Part shown: positions 1,902 to 50,081 of the stretch, piece after piece | Layout of the letters: each line of letters opens with the position of its first letter | Position numbering within the stretch: the first letter of the stretch is position 1 | Assembly: GCF_963506605.1 (NCBI RefSeq) | Contig: NC_083276.1 | Span: 79,050,001 to 79,114,000, forward strand | Length of the DNA stretch: 64,000 nucleotides | Origin: Zootoca vivipara | Taxonomy: Eukaryota | Reading direction: 5' to 3' | Program-made: the position numbers and the translations under genes | Notes under the pieces: model-generated | What the model was told of the DNA's origin: nothing | Database searches by the model: none | What the model saw: only the letters and a program-made list of their open reading frames with translations

Positions 1902-4325
1902 ATGAAGCCAGCGCTTGTCCTTCTGCTCATCACCCTGGCATGTTGCTCCTCCTCTGGTAAGCATTACTAATGGCCTTCATTTCCTCAACAAACTGAAGGA
2001 GCAAAAATAGAACAATTCAGTGTAGTGTCTTCAGAAGGAACATTAGTAAACAAAGTGCCAGAGAGCCTCTGTGAAATGAACTCCAAAACCAGGACCCTTC
2101 AGGCATCGGGATCTTCCGGCAAACGGTACCACCTGCCCTCAGGTAGGTACACATGTGGCCAAATGCAAAGAGTTGTATTCAGCTGAGTTCTACGCACACC
2201 CATTGAAATTCAGGAACCTAAATTCATCCTATCCATTAACTTCAATGGGTCTACTTTGAGTAGAACTAGCACTGAAAACCACCTGATATGTGGAAAGGGG
2301 TCAGTTATGGATACCACTAGTAGCAAGTTTATGAGTCTGGATGGTTAGAGTGTGGGACAGCTGCATATTCCTGCACTGCAGGGGGTTGGACTTGATGATC
2401 CTCAGGTTCCCTTCCAATTCTCTGATTCTATAAAATTACTGGCTCTGACTGTTTTGATGCGAATTAGCAAGGATTGCTTGTGCATCTGGGAGAACAGTTG
2501 GGTTCAGAGGTTGTGACAGCAGAAGGAGCGTGAATAAAAGAAGTGTATGGGTTCAGGGAGAAGAAAGAATAGCTTTCAAAAAGGCTGGTAGTAGTATTCT
2601 GGAATCATGACCCACCTACTTACTTCAGGGAAATGGGGTGGTCCTCTCAGTGCCCAGAACAAGGAGACAAGGAGTTCTCCTGGACTAACTCCCAAGGGCC
2701 CTGCACTCAAGCACAGCCCAACCCAACCCAAGTTCTCTCAGGTGCAGATCCAATTGTGCTTCAAGGGGCTTAAAGGTAAAGGTGAAGGGACCCCTGACCA
2801 TTAGGTCCAGTCGTGACTGACTCTGGGGTTGCGGTGCTCATCTCGCGTTATTGGCCGAGGGAGCCGGTGTACAGCTTCCAGGTCATGTGGCCAGCATAAC
2901 TAAGCCGCTTCTGGTGAACCAGAGCAGCGCACGGAAACGCCGTTTACCTTCCCGCTGTAGCGCTACCTATTTATCTACTTGCACTTTGACGTGCTTTCGA
3001 ACTGCTAGGTTGGCAGGGGCAGGGACCGAACAACGGGAGCTCATCCCGTCGCAAGGATTCGAACCGCCGACCTTCTGATCGGCAAGCCCTAGGCTCTGTG
3101 GTTTAACCCACAGCACCACCTGACCCACGTCCTTACTCCCTTACTCATGAGGCTTACTCCCTAGTACCAGTAATTGTGTTTAGTTGCTTTTGTGCTCCTG
3201 CCTGGCAGCTCACAGGACTGAGCTCAGAAAGATCCAGTTTATGTTGGCTCTAGTAGTGACATCTGCATTCTGTGGTGAGCTCCAGTGTCATACTCAATGG
3301 CATCCAATTTAGAAGTTACTCAGTTCACAGGAAAGCTGGGCCAAAGTGGCTTTTGTGTTTTCTGGGGGGAGGCAGTGCTATGTGGAGGAAGCTTAATGTT
3401 TGAACGTTCCTTCCTGAATACACCACCTCCAGTGAGTGTGCCACCCTTTCATCATGGCTTCATGTCCCTGGCATGCAAACATAGCAATGAGCGAGTAAGC
3501 ATTACAGTCTTCCCTCATGTAGTGTCAGCAGAAGGAGGAGTGCTTCTCCCACCACAACTCTACAGAGTTGTAATTGGTATGCACACCATATAAGAGGTAG
3601 TGCATTCTCAGGTGAGTCACTACAACGGGTTTAAATAAAGCATGGATTTTTTAAAGAAATCTGGTTTTTATTTTTATTTTCTTCCTAGCTTCTTCTCATC
3701 AGTGTGCAGCTGTTCAAAATATTATGTCTCTAATGCTTCATGGATCACAGTCCGATGTGAAGAGTGCTCTTGAAAAACACTCTGCTTCATTGCTTGCAAT
3801 AACTGCTATAGCCACGTTGAAAAATAGTGTCGACAAATTGTCACAGGAGGAAAAAAATGGCTGGAAGACACTGGTGGTAATTCTGTCATTTTTTCTTGCT
3901 TGTTTTTTCCCAGGTTGAAGATTACAAACAGGTTCAGAATTTTCAAACTTTATCTACAGTCTGTTTGTAAAAAAATATATTACAGTACAGATCAAAAGTC
4001 AAACAGCCCTCTCTGTACACAAATCTATGCATAATCTCTCAATTTACACAGTATGCCTGTAAAATTATGAGGAAAGCCCAGGTCTGCCCACACTAAAGCT
4101 GGTCAACTGTTCCAATAGTCCAAGTCACAAAAAGAAGGCAAAGATATTCATTATTTCCACTTATCTGCCATGACGCAATTTCATACGCTTGGGGAAGCTG
4201 GAAGCTTATTAATACTTTTGTTCATCAAAAAGTACTCTGTGCTTTTGTCTCCTGCTTCTTTTACACTTCAACACCCTGTACTGACCTACATTTCATTTCA
4301 GGAAAAAGTGATGGAAAAATGCTAA
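1902..4325 (+). CDS. Secretoglobin-like protein, cluster gene 1 (88 aa); exons 1902-1956, 3689-3876, 4302-4325
   Basis: Kozak GCCACCATG, (TA)n TATA at ~1811-1826, GT-AG introns, coding exons 55/188/24 nt (the 55/188 split is the uteroglobin-family layout). Translation: MKPALVLLLITLACCSSS-ASSHQCAAVQNIMSLMLHGSQSDVKSALEKHSASLLAITAIATLKNSVDKLSQEEKNGWKTLV-EKVMEKC*. Confidence 0.88.
2772..3132 (-). mobile_element. Sauria SINE (Podarcis-type) in intron 1 of gene 1
   Basis: Reverse complement gives a tRNA-like head (GTGGGTTAAACCACAGAGCCTAGGGCTTGCCGATCAGAAGGTCGGCGGTTCGAATCC) and an (ACCTTT)n tail. Confidence 0.88.
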
Positions 4326-4861: not shown

Positions 4862-4951
4862 CATAGCTGCCAAGTTATCCCTTTTTTAAAGGGATTTTCC
4901 ATTATGCTGAATAGGCTTCCTCGCGAGAAAAGGGAAAACTTGGCAGCTATG
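4862..4951. mobile_element. 90-bp MITE
   Basis: CATAGCTGCCAAGTT...AACTTGGCAGCTATG TIRs; TSD CCCACCAG. Confidence 0.82.
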
Positions 4952-6585: not shown

Positions 6586-6626
6586 TTTGGTGACCTCCTC
6601 AGAAAATTAAACTGGTACTAGCTGCC

Positions 6627-6629
<3 letters not shown>

Positions 6630-6700
<71 letters not shown>

Positions 6701-6807
6701 AGATTAAGGGCTTCAGATTGCGCACTTTAATGATGGAGTAGCATTTGAAGGAGGAGGGGAATTAAGAGACAAAGCTTCTCCATCAGCCATCTACCAACAG
6801 GACAGAT

Positions 6808-6863
<56 letters not shown>

Positions 6864-8674: not shown

Positions 8675-11621
8675 ATGAAGCCAACCCTTCTCTTTCTGCT
8701 CCTCATCCTGGCATGTAACTGCAACTCTGGTAAGCATCCGTAATGCCATGCAAGACTCTCTGCCTGAAAACACTGTAGAGTAGGGTTTCTCAAGCCTTCT
8801 ACCCCTCAAGTCCCACCTGACACGGCTGAAAATTACTGTCACAAAGTGGTGGTGCAGGGACAGAACCAGCCGCAAAACGATAGCAGGGAGACGCAGAGCT
8901 TAGCATAACCGACTGGCAATCATGGACGCCATTCTCTACTGATATCTTATTGATCTTTGGACGTTGCTACATTTGCGTTATACACAGAAGGTCCCAGTTT
9001 CAGCCTCCAGCACCTCTAGGCAGGGCTGGCAAAGACTCCTTGTCTGAAATCCTGCAGAGTTACGGCCGGTCAGGGTAGACACTACTAAGTTAGTTAGTGG
9101 CTTGATTTGGTGTAACGCAGCTGCCTGCGTTCCTACTGTTTTGCTCTGGAGATATTGCAACTCAGCCTCTGCATTTTTGGCAGAATTTGCTGATTAGGAA
9201 GCTATAAGCAGAAAAGGCTTTTTCTTTTATATTTTTCTCTTCTCGCTCCCCGTATTCTATAGCCTTTTAAATGTGTTTGTGGGAGGTTTTGTTGTTTCTG
9301 TGTTAACTATTTATTTGTGCTTTTATCTAGTGTTTTTATTTTGTGAACTGCCTTGAGATCTTTTGAAGGATGGTATATAAATCTAATAAGGAATAAATAA
9401 TAATAATAATCAAGCCATACACTGTTTACAGTAACTATTTTCATTGTACATTTAAAACTCCAAAAATCTGAAATAAAATGTATGTGAAAAATTATTTCTT
9501 AAATCGCTAGCTATTTAGTGTTTTTGTTTTGTTTTGTTTGTTTTGCTTTAATGCAGCTTTCTCCATCTGTGAACCTGTCAAGTCTTTCGTAAAAGCGGTG
9601 CTTTTTAAATCGGATGATGAAGTTGAGAAAGAAGTTTCTAAGCACACAGAAGACAGTGATGCCAAGAATTCTGTATTTAAATTGAAAGCGTGTGTCGGCG
9701 AATTAAGCCTTTGGCAAAAAGCAACTCTCCTTCCTGTGGTGGTAATTACATTTTGCTACAACTATCTAGAAAATTAAGCTAAGTCATTTGTGGGAAGTCG
9801 GGGAGAAGGAGAAATAGTTTTGTTCCCACTCTCTACCATGGGAAGCTGAGGTGGGGAGGGAGACAGATGGACAGGTGGTGGTGGAGGAAGTCACTGGCGG
9901 GGGGGTGGGGTGAAAGGCAACAAAAAGCAAAGCTTTCGAGTTCATGGTTCATTTTCTCTCCTGGCTTCAGAGTTGCTGATGCATCTCCTTGCCCAAAGGT
10001 GGAAGGGATTCTGTGGCGGGGATGGGGAATCACTGATTCAGCACCTTGCCACGGGTGCATGGAAGTCTAGGTACACCTTTGCACGCATGCATGCAATCCT
10101 TTAACTTTTAAAATCACATTTCTACCTTCATATTTCAGGTGGTGGACTACTTGTACAGCATAATTGTGTTTCTATGAGATAACTGGCTAAGCCAGTGGTT
10201 CCACTGTTGAATTAGTTCAACTAAAATAGTTTTAACTGGATAATAATAATAATAATATTTTTTAAAATTTATATCCTACTCATCTGGCTGTGTTTCCCCA
10301 GCCACTCTGGCTGGCTTACAACATATAAAACACAGCAAAATATCAAACATTAAAAAAAGATATCCTATACAAACCAATAAATCAATAAAAGCAGTAACAA
10401 CAACAACAACAACAATAATAAACAGTTTATAGTTATACCCAGATTAAAGTAACCACCAACCCCAACTAAACATTATTTTAACCAACACCAACCCAACAAA
10501 AAAGAAGCAGAGCAACCAAAATTAGAACCATTTAAAACATTTTAGCCAATTACCCCAACCCAAGAGTTGTTTCAGCAGTGTTCCAGTGGCCTCCTGGGAG
10601 CCTCTTTTAGCTGTTCAGGGTGAGTGTGGGCCCCACCCCCTGGGCCAGGTGGAAATGGGCCTTTCAGCAGGGAGTGGTCTATTTTGAATAATTGTGCAAT
10701 TAATTGTCACTGTTTTGAGTTTTATTTCATTCTTATCTTCCTTAGTGGGTCGTGCAAACCACTATTCTGAATGATGCTGTTTATAGGGCAGGGGATGCTG
10801 GGAATGAGTTCATGGGACTGGTGTGTGTGTGTGACCCAAAAGTTTGATAACCACTGAGCTAAAGAAAGATACATATATTGAATTAATTATGACTGAAGGT
10901 CCTACCTTTGTTTAATTCAATGGACAAAGTGGTGCTCATGAGGTGTAACTAGGGTGGCCACCAGGTGAAAAAGCAGGAGAGTGGCTCCTGCTCCTGCAAT
11001 AATTGTTTAGATGAAGGAATTCCAGCAGTTGTCACTTGCTACACCTGCAGAAATTCTACTACACAACTGTTAAAGGTACAGGAGTCCCACCCTCTTTCCC
11101 AACTGACCAGCCTACTGACTCTCTTGCTTGGTAGAACGCCAGTGAATACCCATGAGTCTTTGGGTCGTATCTAAGCTGCTGTTCAGCCCATGCAGAAGAC
11201 TTCCACTTGTGAAACTTCCCTCTTATCCCCTGTAGTCCACCACGCAGGTGCCTTCAAAAACTGCTCCAGAGGGTTGGAGGATCCTTCAGAAGAGATTTTG
11301 AGAGTGGGCTGGGAGGGGAAAGGGAAGCCCTGCTGCATAAACAGAATTCCATTGAAAAGTAACAGGTAGATATCAGTGTGAGTAGTATTCTGGTTTCTAG
11401 TATATGAAGAAGAGGCACGGTGCTCCTATAGCTCTCAGATCAAGGCTAGCACCAGTATAGTAAGGGTGTAAAAACTTTTTTTAAAAAAACTTAATCATCT
11501 TTCCAGACAATATATAGCCCATTTTGTTAGGTTGGGATGACACCGGCACTTTATCCTGAGCTTTCACCTGTTCTTTCAATTTCAGAGGAATGTGATGGAG
11601 AACTGCGACTCAATCCAGTAG
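8675..11621 (+). CDS. Secretoglobin-like protein, cluster gene 2 (91 aa); exons 8675-8729, 9557-9741, 11586-11621
   Basis: TATA ~8582-8590; exons 55/185/36 nt with canonical splice sites; ATTAAA at 11811. Translation: MKPTLLFLLLILACNCNS-AFSICEPVKSFVKAVLFKSDDEVEKEVSKHTEDSDAKNSVFKLKACVGELSLWQKATLLPVV-RNVMENCDSIQ*. Confidence 0.87.
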
Positions 11622-11978
11622 CTTCAGTTTCCAAAGGAAATCTACAGCAACACTACAGGTCAACAGCCAGATAAAGCCAATTGCAAGTTGCTTCCGTTCC
11701 TTCTCGCTGATCAAGAAGCCCCATCTTTCCTTTAGAGTGCATTCATCATGATCTACAAAACTTGAAGAAGCCTCCTATAATATTTCTAAATCACTCAAAC
11801 TTCCTGTTTCATTAAACTCATTGCCTTGCATTCAAACTCTGCTTTGTGTATTCTTGATGACAAGTGCTCTTTGCTCGCCCAGTGAACTGCTGGGAAGGAA
11901 CACAAACATTTTGGTTGCAAAGCTGACTTCATAGCAGTCACTTGGGTGTCCGTAATATGCCATGCTACATGGCTGGTA

Positions 11979-15016: not shown

Positions 15017-17807
15017 TTACTCGTCGCTGCTGCATTTGTCAATCATCTTTTTCTGAAATGAAATGAAACAAATGTAAGTACAGGCTGCTAAAGGAAATGA
15101 GGAAGGTTGGGACTAGCTGGTTCTTGGCGAGCATTACTCAGCAGCCTGCTTCCTGAACAGTAGAAGATCATGCCATGGTGAAAATGGCTGAAAGTCAATA
15201 AAAGGCAACTTTGCCTTCTATCTGTGCCTTGATTCACTTGGCTCAGCCATCAGAATAATTGGGCAGCTTTAGGGTTGGAAAAGATGGGTCTTCCTTACGA
15301 TGACACAGGCCTGCTGCATGCATATTAAACTAGAGTTATTACTGTGTGACCTGAATTAGTCTCTGATATATGGAGAAGGCTTTGGTAATATAGACGGCAA
15401 GACAAAGAATTTAGATCCTTTTTAGATCATCAGATATTAACTTGTGGCCTTTGATAGGCATAGTAAAATAATGTTTTTAAATAGCAGACTGCAAATAAAG
15501 TTTGGTGGGATGAAAGACAAGGTATAATAAATACCCAAACACAGGCAAGAAAAAAAACGGCAAAATAGATACTTACCACAAGATCATATAACCCTTCTTT
15601 TTCCTCTTCTGTAAATTTGTCCTGGGTGCAACTTTGCACCTGCTGTGCATTGTCTATCCCATACTTTGCACGAGGTATATATTTTTTAAGCTCCTCTTTT
15701 AAGTCATCCGGTGTTCCAGAAAGGAATGCAGTCACTGAATTCTGGACAGAAGGACACAGCTCAGAATAAACTGGGGGGGGGGGGACAAAATAAAAACAAA
15801 AACAAAAAGTGAATTCATACATGTTTTATTTAAACTCTTTATTGTCATCTTCGAAAAAAGAAATAATCACCTGATAACTGGATGGAAATCATATGACTCA
15901 GCTGAGAGAGCCCAGCTCAGATCCAGCTTGGATGCCCATTTCTCTGCAAGAAAGCTCCATGGGAGAAGAACTTTCTTGTGCTGACACCACATGAGGATGG
16001 TTTAAATGTTCTTTCATTACCATGTTTGTACGTCAGGGACACACAGCCCTGACCAGAGGATGCTATGTTTCCTGGGCTCTGTAGATGCAGGGAAAAAAAT
16101 ACTATACTTCCTCTGTGTAGCACTAACCAAAACTGGCCTTTCCACAGCTGAGTAATTTCTAAATTGGAGGCCATAAATATGACATCTTAACTTACCATAA
16201 AATGCACATGTCACTATGTAGTGAGATTGGGGTACCCCCGTGTGTCCAAACTCAGGCTCATGGAACGCAAAGCATTGTGGGATAAGTAAAACTGTAGCCT
16301 CCTAGGCAAAAGGGTTTTGTTTTTTTTAAAGTGAATTCTTTTCTACACCTCTACACCTAACTGCTTTCTGATTCTGCAGGCAGGGAGATGCTTATCTGAT
16401 TTACAATACAAAAGTGTGAACCCGGAGCAGCTGTGATTTAAGATGTGTATTGGGGCTGCTCCCAAGGTTATCAAGGGCTTTGTGTAGCCTGAGAATTTTG
16501 GGGAGTATTTTGCCTCAAGGTTCTTTGAGTATAAACAGAGTTTCAGCTGTGTCAGTTTTGACAATCATACGATATATGTTTGACATCTGCTATTGGTAAT
16601 TTTGTAATTAGGATCTAACTCTGATAGGCTTAATAATGGAACCCCTCCTAAAGAAAAACGGTCTGGGGAGTGAGATGCAAATCGCTCTCAGCCAGGGGTC
16701 CCCAAACTAAGGCCCGGGGGCTGGATGCGGCCCAATCGCCTTCTAAATCCGGCCCACGGACGGTCCGGGAATGAGCATGTTTTTACATGAGTAGAATGTA
16801 TCCTTTTATTTAAAATGCATCTCTGGGTTATTTGTGGGGCATAGGAATTCGTTCTTTTTTTAAAAGAAAATAAAAAATACAGTCCAGCCCACCCCGACAA
16901 GGTCTGAGAGACAGTGGACCGGCTCCCTGCTGAAAAAGTTTGCTGACCCCTGCTCTCAGCCATTGTGCTATTAGCCATCCTGTTTCAGTCATGTTGCTTA
17001 GAGAATCCTGTTGTAGCCCACTTAAACTCACTGACTATCATCTTCAGTGATTTTTAGGGTGCCCAGGTATAAAAACAGGACAGGGCTCCTGCACCTTTTA
17101 ACAGCTGTGTAAAAAGAGATTTCTGCAGCTGCACCTCCCATGCCAAACTATACAGTATATGGCATCTGGTTGCCATAACATTTTTTTAGAGCTCAGTACT
17201 ATCACTAAGGATGTAAGAAAGCACCGTTTCTGTCAGAAACTATATTACTTGTCTCACTGTCCAATGTGACAAATTTTACATAATTATGTAATTACATTGC
17301 CAATGCACTATTCCACCTCATTCGTTTCCAGACTGAAAGTGACAACGGCTAATACCGATTGCATTCAATCAACTGATTTTCATTCCAAACGTGGAACGAA
17401 TAAGTGAACAGTGGCGATTTCTGCTTCCATTTCCGTCAGAATTCTCCAATATCCCTAACTGTGGCCTGTGCAATCTTAAAGAAAGCATACTGGGAAGAAA
17501 GCCCCATTGGGCACAACAGGACTTACTTTTGAGTAAGCCTGCTTTGTATTGTGCTTTATTTGAGTGGAGGCCATGCAGAGCTGGTCCAGGAAGTCTCATT
17601 GCCTAAAATGCCCAGCTCTTGGAGTTCATTTCACTGAGATTCTACTGTATTTCATTTACAAACATTATCTCTGGTAATGTTATGCTGTACTACTTAATGT
17701 TTGCTTCTTGAGTCTATTGAAACCAAGAGCCAGATGTCTCAGTAGTGATGCTTACCTGAAGAGCAGTAGCATACTAGGGCGATGAGCAGGATGAGTGTCA
17801 GCTTCAT
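15017..17807 (-). CDS. Secretoglobin-like protein, cluster gene 3 (93 aa); exons 17807-17756, 15770-15577, 15052-15017
   Basis: TATA ~17885-17894; exons 52/194/36 nt; ATTAAA ~14807-14812 on -. Translation: MKLTLILLIALVCYCSS-VYSELCPSVQNSVTAFLSGTPDDLKEELKKYIPRAKYGIDNAQQVQSCTQDKFTEEEKEGLYDLV-KKMIDKCSSDE*. Confidence 0.89.
16693..16952. mobile_element. hAT MITE in intron 1 of gene 3
   Basis: CAGGGGTCCCCAAACT...AGTTTGCTGACCCCTG; TSD CTCTCAGC. Confidence 0.88.
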
Positions 17808-24025: not shown

Positions 24026-25623
24026 TCAGTTCTTCCAGTCTTTTTTGCAGCTGTGCATTAAGTTTTTCTGAAATTAAATGAAATCCGGGTGAGTACAGAA
24101 TGTTGAAGGAGAAAGAAGAAAGAAACCACAGGCATGCAGTGTAGCTCCAGTGAGTTTATGTACTGTACGTATTTTCATATACTCTTGCTCACCACTTAGA
24201 TANNNNNNNNNNNNNNNNNNNNNNNNNNNNNNNNNNNNNNNNNNNNNNNNNNNNNNNNNNNNNNNNNNNNNNNNNNNNNNNNNNNNNNNNNNNNNNNNNN
24301 NNNNNNNNNNNNNNNNNNNNNNNNNNNNNNNNNNNNNNNNNNNNNNNNNNNNGGGTTAATCTGAAGGGCCACCAAGGGCTGTACCAGGGCCTGCTGGTGA
24401 AGAATGGCTGGGAGATTAGAAAGGTAATGAACAGCTGGGAGAGGCACATCTATTGGCCATGAGGCTTCAGGGGTCCTTATGAATGAGGAGGAGGGGAAGG
24501 GGTGAGGTAGACAGGGCTTGAGGGAGTTCTAGTCGAGCCAACGCAAGGGTGTTGGACGAAAAAGTATTTGTGTCTTGGATTTAATCATCAGCCTGCTTCT
24601 CAAACAGTAGAAGATTGCCTCATGGGGTGGTATATTTGCCTCCTCTCTGTCAGTGGTGGAGCTTCAAGCTCTGGCGGGGTGGGGGGGTGGAGAGCAGGCA
24701 GGGGCATGGCTGGTGCGCATCCTGGGGGCATGGCATGCCGCCAGCGGGGGTGTGGCACCCAGTGAAGGGGGGGAGCTGTGATAGCACCCCACTGGGATCG
24801 TTCCTCCACCAGTACTCTCTGTACCTCAGTTTGCATGTATGGCATAGGGCATAGGCAACCTGCGTAATGACCGCTCTCCCATCAACCGGAGGGTGCCCTT
24901 TGCATGGCCACGCACAGTACCCTGATCCCTGAGACAATGGCAGAAGTTCCTGGTCCACCTCCCCACGTCACAGCCCTTTTTTGAGGTTCCTGCCAAACCT
25001 CAGTTTTAATAAACCTAGGTGGGGGGGGGAGTTTTTTTCCCCCAGTTCTGTATTTTGTACTCTAATAAATTCATAAATAAAAATGAAATAAAAAATTAGA
25101 TTGGAGGGAAAAACATATACATCCTGGGTTGGATTCAATTAACCCAGTTTGCTAGCAGAAGTCAGTGCACAGGCTCCCACTAGTGTAATATGACTCCGCT
25201 TCTACTCCCCCCCCCCATCCCTTCTGGGGGAGGTCAGGAGAACCCCCAGAACAGCATGCAGCAGGAGGAAAGAGGAGATCATTCTGTTTGGCAAGCACAA
25301 TATCATATTCCTCCCCCTGTCTCTTGTTATGCGTTAGAAGCACAAAAAGCCAGCCAGAAAAAGGACAATGCTTAAAATTACCAGAAGTTTCAAGTATTCC
25401 GAACGTTTCTCATCTGAAAATGTGTCAATAAGATCTTTTACGTCCTTTGCAGCTTGGATGCCATCTTCATTGTCTGAATAACGTTCAAGTTCTTCCAAAT
25501 ACTCAGAATCTGTTCCAGAAAACTTGGCACCCAGAAACTTCTCCATAGGTTTGCATGTTTTGTGGGAATCTAGGAAGAAGGAAAATAAAAACCCAAACAG
25601 GCTGTAAAAAACGCTTTAAACCT

Positions 25624-25673
<50 letters not shown>

Positions 25674-27148
25674 AAAAACTCTTCTTTAGGATGGTCATTA
25701 AAAAGTAAATAAAAACTAAGTGATAACTGGCTGGAAACATGATGGCTCACTTCAGACTGCCCTGCCCAGGATCCGGCTGGGATGCCAGAGAAGAAAACTG
25801 CGAGACAGAGGCATTTACGCCAGCAGATGCTACGACCTTGTCCACACTGGAGCAAAACATGGATTTGCACTTGCCTGTCTCTTCATTATTGCAAGGTTTT
25901 TCAATCCTGGCCTCTTCAGGCTTTCCAATTATTATTATTTTTTAAAAAAACCACATTAAAAGGAGGAAAGGTGTGGGACAACACTGAAATGGAGAGGGTG
26001 TAATGTGGACACTCCTACATTTTTGGGCGGGCAGGCAGGCGCAAATCTACGAAATGAGAGACAGAAGGAAGTGTTTCCATCATCTCCCTCCAGCCTAGCT
26101 AGGGACAGTGGAGAGGCATGCTGGTTTTCTCAGCCTCTGCACCTACCAGATGAATAGAGAAGGCAGGATGGAAGTGAGCATGTGCCTTCAGGCAGTGGCG
26201 CCCAATGCTCATGTCCACCCAGGTCTTTCTTGGGGAGAATACTGAGTGGCCGCCATATGAAATTCAGCTATGGGCTGGATCCGACCTATGGACAGGGGTT
26301 CCTTATACCTCCCTCACCCCCTCTGATAAAGGAGCACCCAAGATCTACCAAGGGGCAAGATAGGCTTGACCTCTATCTTATGCTCTCAGAAAAAAGTAAG
26401 CTAGTTAGGCAAATCTCTTTTGAGAAATTTATTTCACCAAACTAGAAGCAGGGTAAAAGTAATCTGACTTGGCTACTTGTTTAAGAATCAGATGTCTTAT
26501 TAATTCTTGCAATAAATGATGTTTTGCTTGAATTATAAGAATATGTTATCATTTCTGCTCTTAATTTTAATGACTGTAAAAATGTACAGCTATTCTGATG
26601 ATTCGTAATTTCCTAGATTGGAAGGTAATCTTTCTAAGCTCTGTTAAAGTAGGCTAGATAGATACATTCACGGATACCCAGGAACGTCACTAGGCTAGTG
26701 AGTCAATATTCATGGTTATTTTTTATTTTATTATTAATGATCAGGATTAAATACAACATCTTAAAGTTCACAATGCACATATTGTGCTTATATTCCATTT
26801 ACCCAAATATACTATGTTCACCGCAGACAGCATTAGGAGAGGTTGTCGCATTGGTGGGGGGGGGGAAAGACCACCTTTTATCCTGGGCCCCTGGTTGCTA
26901 CTGCAGCTACCTCAGGAGTGTATGCCTGAAGTGTCAGGTTCATGATTTTGCTGAAGTTCTCCTGCATCTCATTTGTAGATGCCATATCTGAAGACATTAG
27001 ACTGGATTATTTTAATATTTCTTCTTGAGGCAAAGAGCCATTAAGTGTCAAAGTGACAGATACCAGAGGAGTGATGCTTACCATGGTGATGTGCATCCAA
27101 GGAGCAGCATGCCAGGGCGAGGAGCAGAAGGACGAGTGTCAGCTTCAT
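24026..27148 (-). CDS. Secretoglobin-like protein, cluster gene 4 (98 aa, His-rich N-terminus); exons 27148-27082, 25569-25382, 24067-24026
   Basis: TATAAAT ~27211-27217 on -; exons 67/188/42 nt; intron 2 contains a 150-N gap. Translation: MKLTLVLLLLALACCSLDAHHH-DSHKTCKPMEKFLGAKFSGTDSEYLEELERYSDNEDGIQAAKDVKDLIDTFSDEKRSEYLKLL-KNLMHSCKKDWKN*. Confidence 0.85.
24203..24352. other. Assembly gap (150 N)
   Basis: Run of N inside intron 2 of gene 4. Confidence 0.99.
25629..25670. repeat. (TA)n microsatellite
   Basis: Read directly. Confidence 0.95.
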
Positions 27149-27366
27149 GGTGGAGAAGAAATCCCAGGATGGGTTCCAATACGCAGCAAAACTGTCTGGG
27201 GTGTGTGTTTATTTATACACACAGAGGAGGTAGCAAGAACCACTCCGCTCTCAACATGACACAGGAGCACACATGACCTTATTTACATTTCTCCTGGTAT
27301 TTACTTACTTAATGTATTTAACGGCAGGGCAACCTAACCGTGTCCTCTCAGAAGTAAGTCCTACTG

Positions 27367-32693: not shown

Positions 32694-33601
32694 ATGCCAG
32701 ATCTCTGCTTGGATCCAAGGCTGTCGCTATGGGAGAAACAAGTCCCTTTGGGGGTATTGATGCTGTGAATGCCTCCATCATAGGATCAGGCTGCATGTAT
32801 GTGTAAATAAACCTTATAGCCTAAAGACACCACAGTCTCCACTGTGCCTCAGTCCAAAAGGAAACATGAACCCTGGGTAAGTGCTTGGAACCCCTGGAAT
32901 CTCATACCGCTCGGAGATTGGGGCAGTGTGCAACAGTAGTCTCCTTTAATTCCAGTTCCCTGAACTGGACACAGTATTCCAGGCTGAGGTCTGACTGAAG
33001 CAAAATACAATGGTACCATGATTTCTTGCAATTGGACACTATACTTCTGCCCAGAAATTTTATTAGCTTTTTTTAGCTGCCATATCACACAGCTGACTCT
33101 TGTGGTCTGTTAAAACCCCAAAGTCCTTTTCATATGTACCTGAATGTTGCAGCAGACTGACTATTCAGAGTCTGCTCTGAATATTCAGAGAGGTATAATA
33201 CAATTCCCCCACCTCTACCCAACATGGTGCTCTTTAATATAGCAATGTTGAACTTTTAATGACCCTTTATCGACAAAAGTTATGTCACCCTTCTAGAATT
33301 CTAGATCCCCAATGAAGTCTCTGGATTAACTGTGACAAAAGTTAATACACACTCAAAAATTAATCTTGAACACAGAAATGCAAGACAGAGTGTTTATTGA
33401 TTATGAATGATTCAAGAACAACAGGGGAGATTTCTCTAGGTTTTCAATAGTATTTGTTGAATACTATCCAGATGGAGAGAGACGTCTCAGGACGGAATAG
33501 TGACAGTACAGAAGAAGACGACGAATGGATAAATGAGTGTTGCTTTGCAGCAACTGATGCTAGTAGTCAGCCTGTGGAATCAGCTTGGATTCATCCATGG
33601 A

Positions 33602-35398
33602 TCAATCCTCCTGCCAGCTTTTCTTGCATGCGGCCATTACATTTTTCTGAAATGAAATGAAATCCAGGTCAATCCAGAGTATTGCGGGACAAAGAAGCAG
33701 GGGATTGTGGGTACACAGTGCAGGTCTGGTTGCTTTTGGGTGATTCAGGTGTGCTGGGAGCAGATGGCCCAATGGCATGTAAGCAAATGAACGGGAGAAA
33801 ACTGGCTCATAGTTTAATTTAGGTCAGCTGGCCTTGCCTGACTGGCTTGCTTGCTTCAAATTTTATTTATATTGTAACCATATTCAGGTACAACACCACA
33901 ACAATTGAGATACAGTTCTCTATGGGGAAGAAGGCAGGACAAGGAATATCAGTGCTTTTTGGATGAGGATATTATATCTTGTGACCTTTGATCTGTATGT
34001 TAATATAACATTTTTAAACAGAGAGGAAAACAAAGATTGATTGCAAATCCCAAATCTGTTTGTTGGCTTGTGGCTGAAAAAAAACAAGAAAAGAAAATGG
34101 CAAAACTGATAATTACCGCCAGTTCAAAGTAAGCTGAATTTTGCTCGCTTGTCAGTTTATCTGCACACTTTTTAAATTTCATTGAGGCATCTACCCCATC
34201 TTGGTCATTTGCATACTTTTCAGCTATCTCCTTAAATTCTTCCTTTGATTTCTTCAGCAATGCTCGCAGAAATTCATCAACAGGATCACACATATCAGAA
34301 GAAACTAGAAAGAAGCAAAAAAAAAAAATCAAAATGGATTTTTCAATAAATTAAATGAATGTTTAAAAACTCTTTACATAAGAAACCCTGTGTGATAGCT
34401 GGCTAGAAGGAAAAGGACTCGCCTGAGAATGCACTAGCTCTGATCTAAACTGGATGCCATTTACTCAGACTATATAATCCTAAACATTTACAAGGCAGCA
34501 GGCCCCACTTAACACAACTGGGCTTCCCAGCTGTGTGGAACTACCACCCCATGAGTTGGTCAGTTGTTGTTCATAATGCAAAATATGAATAGTAACAATT
34601 TTGAAAGTTCTTCCCATGATATATTGTTGGGTTGTGGGTTTTTTTTTAACCTGGTTTGGAGGGGTGTGAAGGATGGATATTACTCAAGATTTGTTACATT
34701 ATTTTGACCCTTGAAGCAGGAAATCCCACAAGCACCTCTCCAGTGCTTCCTTGGGGCCTAACTGCTCTTCCAGGCAGCTAGCAAATGCTGAGCAACCTTG
34801 GCAAGCTGTTGGGCACCAGCACTTTGACTTATTGAGACTTGGTCAACAAAGTGGTGAGTTTGCATTTCTGAGGACCAGTTTTCACCAAACATTTCCTTCA
34901 ATACAGAAGCAATCCCTCACATTGACACAGTAAGTCAAGCCTACCTGAGGCTGGCAATGAGGGAGCCTGGAATTACCACTGTCATAGTGGCTGGAAAATG
35001 TTCCACTGCAGTCACATTAACACCTGCCAGCTGTATCCACAATTATCCCCTTTCCTCATATTACATTCAGCAACACAAATACACACCTAAGTCAGACGCC
35101 TAAAGCCCAGATTTTTTTGGTTATTTCCCCCTCTTGTACTTCATTTGCAAATGCCATCTCTGAAAACACTGTGCTCAATGAGGCCATTAGTGCTTCTTCA
35201 GTGTGTTGAGGAAAAAAGGGCATAATTGTATGTTTGTTGGTTTAAAAGCTTTTCATACCGCTTTTCATTTAAAAACAAATCCCAAATCAGTTAACAACAC
35301 TAAAAGTGCAACAATAGCAATGCTAATCAGGAGTGATGCTTACCAGAGGAGCAGCAACATGCCAGGGCAATGAGGAGAACGACAAATGCCAACCTCAT
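33602..35398 (-). CDS. Secretoglobin-like protein, cluster gene 5 (95 aa); exons 35398-35344, 34304-34117, 33646-33602
   Basis: TATA ~35481-35488; exons 55/188/45 nt; AATAAA 33393-33398 on -. Translation: MRLAFVVLLIALACCCSS-VSSDMCDPVDEFLRALLKKSKEEFKEIAEKYANDQDGVDASMKFKKCADKLTSEQNSAYFELA-KNVMAACKKSWQED*. Has the family FKxC motif. Confidence 0.9.
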
Positions 35399-40461: not shown

Positions 40462-43400
40462 TCAGTTTTGCAGGAGTTGCGGCTTTTCACATTCATGCAG
40501 GATATTTAACTGGAACAAAGATTGCCAATAGAAAGGTATGCTGTAATTCACATGGAGAATAGGGTAAAATCTATGGAGAATAGGGTATAATCATATCTAT
40601 CACTGATATGAAGACAGGAGTGCTTGGCGTGCTCTGGTCCACGGGGTCACAAAGAGTTGGACACGACTAAACGACTAAACAACAACAAATCTCTGATATG
40701 GTATGTCGTATCTAGGCTGTCCTAATCCAGCCACTGTTAGCCAACAGGTTAGCCACTGTGGTGCCTGTAAAAGGTCTCAGTAAATATCCCCTCAAAAATC
40801 TATATTGCACGAGAAAATGTTAGCTTTCCCTGCACAGTTCCTGTTTGCATTCACTCAGCCTCTCCAAGATGGACCATGCATGTCCCTTTAAACATGCTAC
40901 ATTTCAGGATTAGACACACACCCTCCCATCTGTGCTGAACAGGGGAGAGGTGCAAAGAGCTTCTCTCTGTGAGTGAGTGCAGCAGGGGCGAATATAGGTG
41001 AACCCCCCCCCGGCCTCCACTGAAGGAGATGGCTGATGGGGAGGAGGTCTGCACCATTTTGTGTCCTGTCTCTTTTTCTGCTCTTCTACATGTGGCAGCC
41101 ATTTTATAAGTAGAACCCTGTGCTTTCTCAAAATTCTGAATGTGTCCTCTAGCCCAGAAAGGTTGATAACTCCTGCCTTAATCTCAGAGATGGAATGTGC
41201 TTCTTTAATGTGGGAGCTTTAGCCCTTCACTACCAATCCTCATGGAGTGCCATGGAGTGCAAGAAGATCAAACCTATCCATTCTGAAGGAAATCAGCCCT
41301 GAGTGCTCACTGGAAGGACAGATCCTGAAGCTGAGGCTCCAATACTTTGGCCACCTCATGAGAAGAGAAGACTCCCTGGAAAAGACCCTGATGTTGGGAA
41401 AGATGGAGGGCACAAGGAGAAGGGGACGACAGAGGACAAGATGGTTGGACAGTGTTCTCGAAGCTACGAACATGAGTCTGACCAAACTGCGGGAGACAGT
41501 GGAAGACAGGAGTGCCTGGCGTGCTCTGGTCCATGGGGTCATGAAGAGTCGGACATGACTAAACGACTAAACAGCAAGAACCAATCCCCAGGAGCTGGAA
41601 ACCCTCATTGGTTGTAAAATATTCTTTCCTAGCAGAGATACACTTATGGTGCCAATTCTCTAATTTTTAGGCAACAGATGAAGACAGAACTTTTAATGGG
41701 TTGCTTTAATTCTTGGTGTTTCTCTGCTTTTATTACAACCTCTTTGCTATCTAATTAAACTTTCTCTGTGTGGTTCTTTTTTATTATCTGACTTTAGTAT
41801 TTATTATTGAATGAAAAATAAACAATACAATTAACTCATACAGGCACCCAGCCAGCTTATGCTGGAGTCATGATGTGATAAACAGCCATATCTGAACAAG
41901 GCCTCAGAGCCTACCGTACTTCCACTGAAACATATTGTGTCTGTGGTGATGTGAGGCGATGTGTCATAGCAGCTTTAGACCTTCAAGTCCTCAAATGATG
42001 AATATGCATTTGTGAATTTGCCCCAAACTGTGATTTAAGTGTTGGGTATATGTGTGTGAAAATAATTACCAGCACTTGGCTTTTTGCCATTCGAACGGAT
42101 TCCGGAAGCCCGACTGCGCATTGTTTAAGCACAGAAGCAGCTTCCTTCATTTCTTCGGTGGTGGCAAAGCGATCGATTGCTTTCATGTAGTCATCATGCG
42201 AGGCGAAAAGGTAGTTTGTGAGGGTATCAACCAGAAGAGGGCACGTTTTGATAGCAGTAGCTGGAAAGGAATGGAAAATGCTTGAAAATTAGATTTTGAG
42301 TGAGGAAATCTGAATTGTGATAAAAGTTAGCAGGCTTTGAACCAGTTAAGCATCACATGGCAAAACGCAGGTAGTGTAGCTTTGACTAGGGTATTCAAAT
42401 TAAGCAGGAACTATGAGTGCATGATTATATATCAAAAACCAAATATATAATAGATAAAAATATTTTTTAATTAATCTGTTACTTTTGTGAATCTGTCAGC
42501 TTTCCACTTTCTCACCTGCTAACTGACTCCCTAGGGTAGTTGCTATGTACTGAGCTGAATCCTAGAACAATAGGATTCAGAATCAGCGGGAGCTACCCAA
42601 TCCAACTCCAGGTGGAAGTGAATCCGCAACCTGATTGGCCTGCTGGAGCAGCCAATCAGGCGGCTGGCAGAAGTGAATCTGCTACCTGATTGGCCTGTAG
42701 GAGCAGCCAATCAGGCTGCAGGCAGAAGTCAATCCACAATATAATTGGCCCACAGGTGTAGCCCTGAAGTAGCCAATCACGCAAGGCCCATTGTGTAAAT
42801 AATGTATATAAGCAGATGGTTTTGGGAAAAGAGCCATTCGTCTTCTCTTCTTCTCCTTGATGAATATGAGCTGAATAAAGAGCATGAAATTCACTCTCGA
42901 CTCCGAGTATATTTCACTGGCGACGAAGGTGGGATCCTGCTGAGCTGACCGCCACCACGCACTGCACCGCAGCACCGCCACCTGCTGCACCGCTGCATCG
43001 CACCGTGCATCCAGGCTTCAGCTCCAGGACCCAAGGAACCCAGAATGGCAACCGACAGCAGCTTCTCGCCATTCAAACCAGCATCAGGAGACTGGGAAGG
43101 GTACGCCGCCCGTTTCAACTTCCTCCTGCAAGCGAAAGAAGTCACCAACGATGCCATGAAGAGGGCGACATTCTTCAGCGTCTGTGGAGAGGAGACGTTT
43201 GAAATTGCCCGGGCTCTCCTTGCACCTAGAGATGTCGCTACCGTCTCTTACAAAACAATAATGGAACGGCTGAAGGAGCACTTTTCACCACAGCCCTCGG
43301 TGGTAGCTTGCCGAAATGCCTTCTACGCAAAGCGGCAAGCCCCGGGGGAAACCATAACTGGGTTTGTGACCTCCCTCCGCCAAGCCGCCCGGTTATGCAA

Positions 43401-49305: not shown

Positions 49306-49357
<52 letters not shown>

Positions 49358-50081
49358 GCCCATGAAATGCATTTGGGGTAGTGTCAGGGACTGGACCAAG
49401 AAGAGGAGGACAGTATAGATTTAGAACAGTGGTTTGCAGAAGGTCATAGTTCAGAGGCTACAGAGGGGAAAAGCTGGGAAATATTGGGAGAGGAGCAGGA
49501 AGAAGAAGCACCAGGGGAGAGACAGCCGACAGACTCAGTGTCTTTAGACAGCATTCCTGACCCCTCCTTTCCCAGGACCCAGTGTGCATTGAGAGTAGGA
49601 GACCAGAAAGCACAGAGGCAGAAAGCACAGATCAGCCGTCGCAGGGATGACATAGAATAGGAGAGGGGATGGGACTTTACTCGGAGCAATGCCATTATCT
49701 GAGAGGCGTCATCCTCTCTCTGTGTGTGTGTGACTATTGAATAAAATACCATGGTAAGAACTTCTTGTTTTCCCATTTCTGACTGCCAGCCGGGAGGGTG
49801 GGGGATCGGATTCACCTGAAGCCTGACAGGTAGGCAACTTTATACTGCTACTGAAAACTAATTTGAGCAGCAGGATAACAATGACTTACACATTTTATGT
49901 ATTTAAGGAAAACTGATTAGTATGAAATTGTCCAGTATGAAACTCTTTCCTATGGAGGCATCCATACTTACCCCAAAAGGCCCATTGAGATGAAAATGTC
50001 TTGTTATAATGGGCTAAGCAACTCACCTGAATAACAGCAAACCAACAGAGTGCCCAGGAGAAATACAGTTGTCAGCTTCAT
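40462..50081 (-). CDS. Secretoglobin-like protein, cluster gene 6 (97 aa, most mammal-like); exons 50081-50027, 42260-42070, 40509-40462
   Basis: TATA ~50158-50168; exons 55/191/48 nt; AATAAA 40251-40256 on -. Translation: MKLTTVFLLGTLLVCCYS-ATAIKTCPLLVDTLTNYLFASHDDYMKAIDRFATTEEMKEAASVLKQCAVGLPESVRMAKSQVL-LNILHECEKPQLLQN*. The CP...L...Y...F...LKQC pattern matches SCGB1-type chains. Confidence 0.88.
41249..41572 (+). mobile_element. BovB LINE 3' fragment in intron 2 of gene 6
   Basis: Encodes ...LQYFGHLMRREDSLEKTLMLGKMEG...; a smaller fragment lies at ~40608-40688. Confidence 0.88.
42541..42916 (+). repeat. 5' LTR
   Basis: TG...CA ends; repeated CTGATTGG/CCAATCAG CCAAT modules, TATATAA, AATAAA. 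Confidence 0.95.
43045..47115 (+). CDS. Gypsy gag-pol polyprotein (1356 aa)
   Basis: Two zinc knuckles (CASCGENHERRTC, CRQCRKLGHIARVC), protease LDTGS, RT (DLAQAYQQL...FFDD), RNase H (CDAS...TDHKPL), integrase HHCC plus DFAGP/SDNG/NGQAER, in PR-RT-RH-IN order with no frameshift. Confidence 0.97.
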   Translation: MATDSSFSPFKPASGDWEGYAARFNFLLQAKEVTNDAMKRATFFSVCGEETFEIARALLAPRDVATVSYKTIMERLKEHFSPQPSVVACRNAFYAKRQAPGETITGFVTSLRQAARLCNFSELENMLRDRLVGGLRDEMLQRRLYAKKDLTFQIALEEALATEAAERSTQEARPAPPSQPRVYHEDLTDESESDREEVHRVQRRTQAAHTPQQPRREGGNCASCGENHERRTCRFRNAECRQCRKLGHIARVCRARLTRRQASDDRPRSPRAHGTMHQGNSTEITGYQVFQLPHPSTEKIYIEVQIEGAPCRMELDTGSTLSIISARTLRELCPNGGPKLRPAPFTLRDFQKRKVPTMGVGTFRVQYRGRKQQLDLLVVKGPYVSLLGLAWFGPLGLAVTGVNRTSLQVDVDAICKEFPGVFDGALGRYTGPPIALQLDPVVRPIRHKARRVPFALKPRIDEELDRLVEQGVLEPVPNAPWETPIVTPVKPNGSVRICADYKCTINKALTAHAYPVPVVSHVLATLAGSKIFGKLDLAQAYQQLPVDEATAEAQTIVTHRGAFRVKRLQFGVSVAPGIFQNLMDSLLKGIPGVTPFFDDVLIAGPTPEEFEDRLRSVLHRFQTAGLKVKREKCLLGVPQVDFLGFKVDAEGVHPTGDKVRAICEAPAPKSKPELQSFLGLLNFYHAFLPHKAAVAEPLHRLLDKRAPWVWGQRQRAAFQAVKDLLVSNSVLAHFDERLPVVLACDASPYGIGAVLGHQLPDGREVPVAYFSQTLAAAERNYSQIDKEGLAIVKGVKKFHDFLYGRPFTIVTDHKPLLGLFAPEKQTPQVLSPRVLRWSIFLAGYQYALIHRPGKAMGHADALSRLPLPETGPDPAPAQEVMTLELLPDRPIQAQEVAHHSTKDRVISRVLDWVWRGWPSSSPGPEFAGYTNRKHELSAHKGCLLWGSRVVVPQPLRKRVLTALHETHPGVVRMKALARSYVWWPGIDREIEAWVQHCQTCQESRPDPPRAPVQPWESARHPWSRLHVDFAGPFQGKTFFIVVDSYTKWLEVALVPSTSTAAAIRVLRKLFATHGLPDTLVSDNGTAFTSEEFQTFTAQNAIRHIRSAPFHPATNGQAERMVRTTKDSLRRITQGDWEYRLAAFLLAQHSTPSTTTGRSPAELLMGRRLATRLDRLHPDRAQDEVVVGNGRNPRTFVAQDPVYAKNFGAGPAWVPATVTKVTGPVSYEVLTEGGQCWRRHCDQLRRRFPGGTREESGTEGSQGDSRAVRPVEREGWAGEAEAVGTEGHPEAGRTPEPESQPSGSVAPDQTAPAQPAALEHEPEPEPLTKEHPRPQRTRRRPADLGDYECNFPGRTGT
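47126..47501 (+). repeat. 3' LTR
   Basis: Same sequence as the 5' LTR; preceded by the polypurine tract. Confidence 0.95.
48097..48527 (+). mobile_element. BovB LINE 3' fragment in intron 1 of gene 6
   Basis: VVMYGSESWTIKKADRRRIDAFELWCWRRLLRVPWT...; (CAA)n tail. Confidence 0.9.
49308..49354. repeat. (GA)n microsatellite
   Basis: Read directly. Confidence 0.95.
49382..49828 (+). mobile_element. Solo LTR of a second LTR family, in intron 1 of gene 6
   Basis: TGTCAGG...CCTGACA termini, 5-bp TSD GGTAG on both sides, AATAAA at ~49740. Confidence 0.75.

What the first reader, a model, noticed from the sequence alone, without database searches (positions are those of the whole stretch)
1902..50081. 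Hidden six-gene cluster of divergent lizard secretoglobins: candidate scent/ligand-carrier system
Seen: six complete three-exon genes with matched architecture (signal exon ending G|GT in phase 1, 185-194 nt exon 2 ending in phase 0, short exon 3 with a Cys). All are open-frame, have TATA boxes, and most have a visible polyA signal. None appears as an ORF in the six-frame track. Known: this exon layout and the N-Cys / K-x-C / C-Cys spacing define secretoglobins (uteroglobin, lipophilins, mouse ABP, Fel d 1), which are disulfide-linked dimers with a hydrophobic pocket; large expansions are best known in mammals and tied to chemical signalling. Secretoglobin genes have been reported in reptiles, so the family itself is not new. 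Inference: this is a lineage-specific squamate expansion that could supply lipid or steroid carrier proteins to femoral-gland or other exocrine secretions.
Basis: partly seen in the sequence, partly recalled or inferred. Interest (0 to 1): 0.9.

Follow-up and report, generated by a model that had tools for sequence, protein, structure and literature searches.

The report
Six-gene lizard secretoglobin cluster
The window holds six intact small secreted-protein genes of the uteroglobin (secretoglobin) family in a row; their counterparts are already auto-annotated in wall lizards, and nothing yet ties them to scent glands.

Summary
Six three-exon genes lie between 1902 and 50081. All splice sites are GT-AG, intron 1 is phase 1 and intron 2 is phase 0. 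Exon 2 is 185-194 nt and exon 3 is short and carries a Cys.

All six exon-2 peptides pass Pfam's Uteroglobin cut-off (32-41 bits against 24.8). Each spliced model is as long as an annotated Podarcis protein and aligns with it end to end (73-94% identity). The assembly gap lies in intron 2 of gene 4 and touches no reading frame.

In a tree, genes 1-5 fall in a squamate-only clade (support 98/98) that also holds gecko and iguanian proteins. Gene 6 belongs to an older amniote lineage next to the mammalian uteroglobins.

The cluster is not truly hidden. NCBI and UniProt call the orthologues "uteroglobin-like", and a 2025 survey reports lizard secretoglobins, though only two per wall lizard.

The scent or femoral-gland idea has no support. 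Three RNA runs of the same species gave no exon reads for gene 4, and a sand-lizard femoral-gland proteome names no such protein. This is a new member of a known kind, of modest interest.

The parts
1902..1956 (+). G1 exon 1 (signal peptide, 55 nt, phase 1 donor)
   Evidence: orthologues P0003/P0004 align end to end
3689..3876 (+). G1 exon 2 (188 nt)
   Evidence: Pfam PF01099 34.3 bits
4302..4325 (+). G1 exon 3 (24 nt, ends Cys-stop)
8675..8729 (+). G2 exon 1 (55 nt)
9557..9741 (+). G2 exon 2 (185 nt)
   Evidence: Pfam PF01099 32.1 bits; 91% to P0006 over 91 aa
11586..11621 (+). G2 exon 3 (36 nt); ATTAAA at 11811-11816
17756..17807 (-). G3 exon 1 (52 nt)
15577..15770 (-). G3 exon 2 (194 nt)
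   Evidence: Pfam PF01099 37.6 bits; 87% to P0007 over 93 aa
15017..15052 (-). G3 exon 3 (36 nt); ATTAAA at 14807-14812
27082..27148 (-). G4 exon 1 (67 nt, 12 nt longer than in the paralogues, adds a His-rich stretch)
   Evidence: identical stretch in P0002
25382..25569 (-). G4 exon 2 (188 nt)
   Evidence: Pfam PF01099 40.6 bits
24203..24352 (.). Assembly gap, inside intron 2 of G4, 135 nt upstream of the exon 3 acceptor
24026..24067 (-). G4 exon 3 (42 nt); ATTAAA at 23827-23832
   Evidence: 94% to P0002 over 98 aa
35344..35398 (-). G5 exon 1 (55 nt)
34117..34304 (-). G5 exon 2 (188 nt)
   Evidence: Pfam PF01099 40.8 bits; 71% to P. muralis 'uteroglobin' P0001
33602..33646 (-). G5 exon 3 (45 nt); AATAAA at 33393-33398
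50027..50081 (-). G6 exon 1 (55 nt)
42070..42260 (-). G6 exon 2 (191 nt)
   Evidence: Pfam PF01099 37.8 bits; PDB uteroglobin sequence hits
40462..40509 (-). G6 exon 3 (48 nt); AATAAA at 40251-40256
   Evidence: 15/15 identical to the C-terminus of P0008

Best explanation
This is a conserved tandem cluster of six intact secretoglobin (SCGB, Pfam Uteroglobin) genes in a lacertid lizard. Each gene encodes a roughly 19-residue signal peptide followed by a 69-80-residue four-helix protein.

By family analogy, and in a prediction made on a 94%-identical orthologue, the mature chains pair antiparallel. The N-terminal Cys of one chain faces the C-terminal Cys of the other, and the dimer encloses a mostly hydrophobic pocket able to hold a small lipophilic ligand. 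G1 and G4 have two Cys, as uteroglobin does. G2, G3, G5 and G6 have a third Cys at position 44, as lipophilins, mammaglobins, ABP and Fel d 1 do.

G1-G5 come from duplications early in squamate evolution, and their mature parts evolve fast. G6 is the older, slower, amniote-wide member next to the mammalian uteroglobins.

Shown: gene structure, family membership, orthology, and clade placement. Inferred: secretion, disulfide-linked dimers, and ligand binding. Unknown: tissue and ligand. My default expectation is mucosal or exocrine secretions.
For: - Gene models have canonical splice sites and phases.
- PF01099 scores 32.1-40.8 bits against a 24.8 cut-off for all six exon-2 peptides.
- PDB sequence hits for G6 exon 2 are uteroglobin, CC10 and Fel d 1.
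- All six have end-to-end, same-length Podarcis orthologues at 73-94% identity.
- P. lilfordi accessions CAI5763087-090 run in the same order as G6, G4, G3, G2.
- AlphaFold models of the orthologues P0008 and P0002 (pLDDT 63.5 and 78.1) show four helices after the signal peptide. Their ten best PDB matches are all secretoglobins, with TM 0.72-0.82 by target length and rmsd 1.2-1.6 A for the uteroglobin and CC10 chains.
- Homodimer test on P0002 residues 20-98: score 0.83 against a best control of 0.01. The runs agree in at least 98% of contacts and partner pLDDT is at least 86. The mark was reached by 21 of 30 solved one-chain pairs and 0 of 23 single chains (microbes). On eukaryotes it was reached by 17 of 29 pairs (animals 7 of 16) and 0 of 30 single chains, but by only 1 of the 7 with no older solved relative. 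The pass may therefore come from memory of solved uteroglobin dimers.
- Cys sit at uteroglobin positions 3, (44) and 67, Lys42 is kept in 5 of 6, and pocket positions are mostly hydrophobic or aromatic.
- Tree: G1-G5 clade 98/98; G6 clade 100/95, joined to the uteroglobins at 96/85.
- Paralogue dN/dS in the mature part is 0.46-1.17, and the signal peptide is better conserved.
Against: - There is no expression evidence in this species. Three RNA runs of the same species label, each about 6% sampled and of unknown tissue, gave no exon reads for G4.
- Structure and dimer predictions were made on Podarcis orthologues, not on the window's own spliced proteins.
- G1 lacks a canonical poly(A) hexamer within 400 nt of its stop.
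- G1 and G2 have His at pocket position 28 and Val at 21, so ligand binding may differ or be weak.
- dS between paralogues is near saturation, so the dN/dS values are rough.
Confidence: 0.85

Rival explanations
1. One reading: the squamate-specific copies (G1-G5) are carriers of lipid or steroid semiochemicals in femoral-gland, cloacal or other scent secretions. They would be analogous to mouse ABP, Fel d 1, loris brachial-gland protein or the platypus crural-gland secretoglobins.
For: - The family is tandemly arrayed, lineage-restricted and fast-evolving in its mature part, with dN/dS up to about 1. G5 is only 72-78% identical to its Podarcis orthologues in the mature part.
- Mammals offer analogies. 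A species-specific uteroglobin-like cluster is specific to the platypus crural gland (PMC12709850).
- Femoral secretions are protein-lipid blends whose carrier proteins are poorly identified (abstracts).
Against: - No tissue data exist for these genes.
- Three same-species RNA runs gave no G4 reads.
- The terms uteroglobin, secretoglobin and allergen occur nowhere in the held supplements of the L. agilis femoral proteome, which was searched against Lacertidae TrEMBL. Those files were cut when stored, and divergent orthologues would be hard to match.
- No paper links femoral glands with uteroglobin.
- The paralogue lineages are old (shared with gecko and iguanian species), which does not look like a recent bloom.
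Confidence: 0.1
2. The genes are uteroglobin-like mucosal proteins of airway, oviduct, lacrimal or nasal epithelia, with an immunomodulatory or protective role, and with no part in communication. This applies above all to G6.
For: - G6 sits in a clade with archosaur and platypus proteins next to the mammalian uteroglobins (96/85).
- G6 is the slowest-evolving copy, 92-94% identical to its Podarcis orthologues in the mature part.
- Its nearest solved relatives by sequence and fold are uteroglobin and CC10.
- Karn and Laukaitis propose a basic function shared by all amniotes (PMC11884772).
Against: - There are no expression data.
- G1-G5 evolve much faster than expected for a housekeeping mucosal role.
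- The tree is unrooted and rests on 95 columns.
Confidence: 0.3
3. Some of the six are unexpressed or decaying duplicates that merely keep an open frame.
For: G1 has no canonical poly(A) signal. G4 gave no RNA reads.
Against: - All six keep intact frames, canonical splice sites, both dimer Cys and TATA elements.
- Each has a full-length orthologue of identical length in species that differ by 6-28% in protein sequence. That is not expected of pseudogenes.
Confidence: 0.05

Closest known systems
NCBI/UniProt-annotated 'uteroglobin-like' genes of Podarcis muralis, P. raffonei and P. lilfordi (XP_028563307.1, XP_028592436.1, XP_053252458.1, XP_053252434.1, CAI5763087.1, CAI5763088.1, CAI5763090.1)
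   Same: They are one-to-one orthologues of all six genes, with identical protein lengths (88, 91, 93, 98, 95, 97 aa). They lie on a single chromosome-sized contig in each species. The P. lilfordi accession order matches the gene order in the window.
   Different: Protein identity is 73-94%, so the window comes from another lacertid species. Source names are inconsistent: uteroglobin, SCGB1A1, SCGB1D2-like, Fel d 1 chain 1-like, hypothetical. P. lilfordi has a seventh member (CAI5763092.1) that is not found in this window.
Lizard secretoglobins of Karn and Laukaitis 2025 (PMC11884772), including the 'wall lizard NOVEL clade'
   Same: Same family and same validation criteria: three exons, intron phases 1 and 0, the uteroglobin fold, proximal and distal Cys, and pocket residues. 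The same host genus was sampled.
   Different: Their table lists only two genes per wall lizard (plus one SCGB2A in P. lilfordi) and describes no cluster. Here six genes lie in 48 kb. Five of them form a squamate-only clade that also holds gecko and iguanian members.
Mammalian uteroglobin / CC10 (SCGB1A1; PDB 1utg, 1utr, 1ccd)
   Same: Shared features are the four-helix fold, the antiparallel homodimer geometry (predicted), Cys3, Lys42, a hydrophobic pocket, and the exon layout. G6's clade joins the uteroglobins at 96/85.
   Different: The distal Cys is at position 67, not 69. Four of the six have an extra Cys44. Identity to uteroglobin is about 20-26%. Orthology of G6 to SCGB1A1 is not established.
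Lineage-specific SCGB expansions used in exocrine signalling or venom: mouse ABP (SCGB1B/2B), cat Fel d 1, platypus crural-gland uteroglobin-like cluster (PMC12709850)
   Same: Tandem duplication, fast evolution of the mature peptide, and a three-Cys pattern in several members.
   Different: There are no head-to-head alpha/beta-gamma gene pairs; the orientation is + + - - - -. The duplications are ancient rather than recent. No gland or sex-specific expression is known.

Membership tests
Secretoglobin (SCGB) superfamily, criteria of Karn and Laukaitis 2025 (PMC11884772, section 6) | [quoted passage not shown] | tested here: met
   All six genes.
Secretoglobin (SCGB) superfamily | Exon and cDNA sizes in the family range (exon 1 about 55-61 nt, exon 2 about 188 nt) | tested here: met
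   Exon 1 is 52-67 nt, exon 2 is 185-194 nt, and the CDS is 267-297 nt.
Secretoglobin (SCGB) superfamily | Sequence match to Pfam PF01099 Uteroglobin above the gathering score | tested here: met
   32.1-40.8 bits against 24.8, on exon 2 alone, for all six.
Secretoglobin (SCGB) superfamily | Four-helix uteroglobin fold | tested here: met
   Tested on the 94%-identical orthologues P0008 (of G6) and P0002 (of G4), not on the window's joined proteins. Both models show four helices. The top ten PDB matches are all secretoglobins, with TM 0.72-0.82 and rmsd 1.2-1.6 A for the uteroglobin and CC10 chains.
Secretoglobin (SCGB) superfamily | Proximal and distal half-Cys for antiparallel disulfide-linked dimers | tested here: met
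   Cys at uteroglobin positions 3 and 67 (69 in G3) in all six. The predicted homodimer interface includes both Cys regions: score 0.83 against a best control of 0.01, which may come from memory. The disulfides themselves cannot be tested here.
Secretoglobin (SCGB) superfamily | Conserved pocket residues (positions 6, 13, 21, 28, 41) and Lys42 | tested here: inconclusive
   Lys42 is kept in 5 of 6 (G3 is shifted by one inserted residue). G4, G5 and G6 keep aromatic residues at 21 and 28. G1 and G2 have Val21 and His28. Position 63 was not mapped.
Uteroglobin proper (SCGB1A1) | Orthology to mammalian SCGB1A1 | tested here: inconclusive
   G6's clade (100/95) is joined to the mammalian uteroglobins at 96/85 in an unrooted tree of 95 columns. 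G1-G5 lie outside that group. Synteny with the mammalian locus was not testable.
ABP / Fel d 1-type heterodimer modules | Head-to-head pairs of an SCGB1-type and an SCGB2-type gene that encode the two chains | tested here: not met
   The orientation is + + - - - -, with no divergent pair. Heterodimer formation itself was not tested.

The most novel reading that the evidence does not exclude
G1-G5, together with a seventh Podarcis member, would define an undescribed squamate-specific secretoglobin subfamily. Its fast-evolving members would be secreted by femoral, cloacal or other scent glands and would carry the lipid semiochemicals of lizard chemical signals. That would be a reptilian counterpart of mouse ABP or the platypus crural-gland secretoglobins.
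Probability: 0.1. Interest if true: 0.65.

Novelty: new member of a known kind. Interest (0 to 1): 0.3.

Why it matters
Secretoglobins were long thought to be mammalian. The only survey of reptiles (2025) lists two genes per wall lizard and calls their clade questionable.

This window shows that a lacertid carries at least six intact genes in 48 kb. Five belong to a well-supported squamate-only clade with gecko and iguanian members. One belongs to an amniote-wide lineage next to uteroglobin.

That gives a cleaner picture of how the family diversified outside mammals. It also supplies exact exon coordinates for expression and proteomic tests. The protein fraction of lizard scent secretions is poorly understood, so these small lipid-pocket proteins are reasonable candidates to look for, but at present they are only candidates.

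Tried and rejected
- RNA test. No indexed RNA run holds the G1 stretch. Three raw-read RNA runs of the same species label (X21-X23, about 6% of each read, tissue unknown) were laid on 23700-27300 (G4). They gave one partly fitting intronic read in each of two runs, no exon reads and no joints. So there is no support for expression and no RNA test of continuity across the gap. The single read-laying run was then spent, so G1-G3, G5 and G6 were not tested.
- Femoral-gland proteomes. The terms uteroglobin, secretoglobin, allergen, lipophilin and mammaglobin are absent from the held (cut) supplements of PMC9000839, and the first three from the supplement of PMC10465503. No supplements are held for PMC11884772, so the exact Podarcis accessions in that survey could not be compared.
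- Seventh gene. tblastn with P0018 and P0014 at E up to 5 found no further locus or remnant in the window. All 138 fetched family proteins hit only the six loci.
- The tRNA scan of the window found nothing.
- The regional identity table for introns against exons is noisy, because end gaps were free. Only its general trend is used.
- Joined step left out. The spliced proteins have no reference, so they were never sent to any search, structure or complex tool. Pfam, PDB and homologue searches used exon 2 by reference. Structures and the dimer used Podarcis orthologues. Joined translations were made only inside local scripts, for comparison with fetched proteins and for the tree.


Full report
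**1. Observation.**

A mechanical scan looked for AG|exon|GT segments of 170-211 nt that are open in the frame expected after a phase 1 intron, with a Cys near the start. It returned six exon-2 candidates with GTAATT or GTAAGT donors. Matching signal-peptide exons, each ending G|GT in phase 1, and short Cys-bearing last exons were found for each candidate. The six models translate without stops to 88, 91, 93, 98, 95 and 97 aa.

G1 and G2 are on the + strand and G3-G6 on the - strand. Intron 1 is 827-1985 nt in G1-G5 and 7766 nt in G6; intron 2 is 425-1844 nt. Each gene has a TATA-like heptamer 69-93 nt before the ATG. Five have AATAAA or ATTAAA 190-206 nt after the stop; G1 has none within 400 nt.

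Three small corrections apply:
- The middle Cys is present in four of the six genes.
- Exon 1 is 52 nt in G3 and 67 nt in G4.
- G3 exon 2 does appear inside a 130-aa ORF of the six-frame list.

**2. The assembly gap.**

The only N run (24203-24352) lies in intron 2 of G4. There are 1029 nt of intron on the exon 2 side and 135 nt on the exon 3 side. No reading frame crosses it.

The last 50 nt or so of the intron, beyond the gap, align with the intron-2 ends of G5, G3 and G1 (73-80% identity). The model that joins exon 2 to the exon 3 beyond the gap is 94% identical over all 98 residues to a P. lilfordi protein. Order and orientation across the gap are thus those of one gene. A missing stretch of intron, or even an extra copy hidden in the gap, cannot be excluded. 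I did not try to read or fill the gap.

**3. What the genes are.**

The spliced proteins have no reference, so I searched exon by exon. All six exon-2 peptides match Pfam PF01099 (Uteroglobin) at 32.1-40.8 bits, against a curated cut-off of 24.8. G6 exon 2 finds human, rabbit and rat uteroglobin/CC10 and Fel d 1 among solved structures.

A homologue search with G5 exon 2 found 'uteroglobin [Podarcis muralis]' at 71% identity. A profile of all six exon-2 peptides found eight Podarcis proteins of 88-98 aa.

In a local comparison, each joined model matched one Podarcis protein of exactly its own length, end to end:

| Gene | Best Podarcis orthologue(s) | Identity |
|---|---|---|
| G1 | P. raffonei / P. 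muralis 'uteroglobin-like X2' | 84% / 83% |
| G2 | P. lilfordi CAI5763090.1 | 91% |
| G3 | P. raffonei 'major allergen I chain 1-like' | 87% |
| G4 | P. lilfordi CAI5763088.1 | 94% |
| G5 | P. muralis XP_028563307.1; P. raffonei XP_053252420.1 | 73%; about 78% |
| G6 | P. lilfordi CAI5763087.1 'SCGB 1D member 2-like' | 94% |

This independently confirms all eighteen exons. It also shows that automated annotation has already found these genes in related species. The three Podarcis species differ from each other by only 1-5% in these proteins, so the window comes from a more distant lacertid.

The P. lilfordi accessions CAI5763087 to CAI5763090 follow the order G6, G4, G3, G2. All lie on one chromosome-sized contig.

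**4. Fold and dimer.**

- P0008 (94% identical to G6), with a 7-row alignment, gave pLDDT 63.5.
- P0002 (94% identical to G4), with a 48-row alignment, gave pLDDT 78.1, with the core at 86-92.

Both models show a signal helix followed by four helices. For both, the ten best Foldseek matches in the PDB are exclusively secretoglobins: uteroglobin 1utg and 1utr, CC10 1ccd, a uteroglobin fusion, and Fel d 1. For the uteroglobin and CC10 chains the TM-score is 0.72-0.82 by target length and the rmsd is 1.2-1.6 A over 61-65 columns. The E-values are only 0.02-0.1, as expected for 70-residue helical proteins.

A two-copy prediction of P0002 residues 20-98 scored 0.83 against a best control of 0.01.
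- The three runs agree in at least 98% of contacts, and partner pLDDT is at least 86.
- The interface is symmetric and includes both Cys regions (residues 27-31 and 91-97).
- The mark was reached by 21 of 30 solved one-chain pairs and by 0 of 23 single chains (microbes).
- On eukaryotes it was reached by 17 of 29 pairs (animals 7 of 16) and 0 of 30 single chains, but by only 1 of the 7 with no older solved relative.

Uteroglobin dimers are solved, so this pass shows likeness to the family and may come from memory.

**5. Family criteria.**

Karn and Laukaitis (PMC11884772) define membership by five features: three exons with introns in phases 1 and 0; typical exon sizes; the uteroglobin fold; proximal and distal half-Cys; and conserved pocket residues with Lys42. 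The first four are met (the fold on orthologues only).

For the fifth, I counted positions from the proximal Cys taken as position 3:
- Lys42 is kept in five of the six genes.
- G4, G5 and G6 have aromatic residues at positions 21 and 28.
- G1 and G2 have Val21 and His28.

Cys lie at positions 3 and 67 in G1 and G4, which is uteroglobin-like. G2, G3, G5 and G6 have an added Cys at position 44 (45 in G3), the pattern of lipophilins, mammaglobins, ABP and Fel d 1. No head-to-head gene pair like the Abpa-Abpbg or Fel d 1 modules is present.

**6. Evolution.**

A profile search of 1.84 billion representatives found 134 family members at E up to 0.001. Each of the six Podarcis types is its own 50% cluster.

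The nearest named non-lacertid proteins are from Anolis sagrei, Elgaria, Sceloporus and Sphaerodactylus, then bats and other mammals.

A careful maximum-likelihood tree of 71 proteins (95 columns, unrooted) gave the following:
- G1-G5 fall with their Podarcis orthologues, the seventh P. lilfordi protein, and the Sceloporus, Sphaerodactylus and one unnamed protein in one clade (98/98).
- Within that clade, G2 groups with the seventh Podarcis protein and Sceloporus (99/97).
- G5 groups with the gecko protein (94/74).
- G6 groups with Elgaria and Anolis (94/90), inside a clade with ostrich, alligator and platypus proteins (100/95).
- That clade joins the mammalian uteroglobins (96/85).

So five genes are products of a squamate-restricted radiation that had begun before lacertids arose. 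G6 is an old amniote gene.

Between paralogues, mature-peptide identity is 14-35% and dN/dS is 0.46-1.17 (with dS near saturation). Signal peptides are much better conserved. Non-coding flanks of G1, G3, G4 and G5 are about as similar to each other as exon 2 is (a rough measure). Against Podarcis, G5 (72-78% in the mature part) and G1 (81-83%) are the fastest; G4 and G6 (92-94%) are the slowest.

**7. Function.**

Nothing here shows where the genes are expressed. No indexed RNA run holds the G1 stretch. Three same-species RNA runs gave no exon reads for G4, but the tissues are unknown, only 6% of each run was read, and only one gene was tested.

Published femoral-gland proteomics of lacertids does not mention the family. 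That is weak evidence, because the held supplements were cut and divergent orthologues are hard to match.

The scent-carrier idea remains an analogy with mouse ABP, Fel d 1 and the platypus crural-gland cluster. I put it at about 10%. A mucosal, uteroglobin-like role is more likely for G6.

**8. Novelty.**

The family in lizards is published (PMC11884772), and the orthologues are annotated. Not described, as far as the searched library shows, are three things: the six-gene tandem arrangement, the well-supported squamate-only clade of five or six paralogue lineages, and the placement of the sixth gene beside uteroglobin. This is a new member of a known kind, and of modest interest.

Noticed in passing
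window 43045-47115 (+), within intron 1 of G6: An intact 1356-aa ORF with reverse transcriptase, RNase H and integrase domains. It is a Ty3/gypsy-like LTR retroelement on the strand opposite to G6. It accounts for the GC-rich block at 42-48 kb and for the 7.8-kb intron.
   Followed up: partly
window 57901-59601 (+): A 566-aa ORF with FISNA, NACHT, winged-helix and HD2 domains of an NLR protein. It lies next to the secretoglobin cluster.
   Followed up: partly
window 2077-2152 (+), in intron 1 of G1: An alternative first exon that matches the N-terminus of 'isoform X1' of the G1 orthologue in P. raffonei and P. muralis (P0005, P0146). That isoform lacks a signal peptide.
   Followed up: partly
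window 27082-27148 (-), G4 exon 1: This exon is 12 nt longer than in the paralogues and adds a His-rich stretch just before the mature domain. The stretch is identical in the P. lilfordi orthologue P0002. Whether it survives signal cleavage or binds metal was not tested.
   Followed up: partly
outside the window (P. lilfordi CAI5763092.1, P0018): P. lilfordi has a seventh secretoglobin, annotated right after the G2 orthologue, that groups with G2 and a Sceloporus protein. It has no counterpart or remnant in this window. It may lie beyond the left edge of the window or be lost in this species.
   Followed up: partly
window 40462-50081 (G6) and tree: G6 and its Anolis, Elgaria, ostrich, alligator and platypus relatives join the mammalian uteroglobins at 96/85. 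This sits uneasily with the published statement that SCGB1A is uniquely mammalian. The tree is unrooted and short, so this is only a lead.
   Followed up: partly
window 15430-15822 (-): This 130-aa six-frame ORF is G3 exon 2 read through into both flanking introns. Logan-derived proteins P0009-P0011 are read-through ORFs of the same kind from genomic contigs of related lizards.
   Followed up: yes
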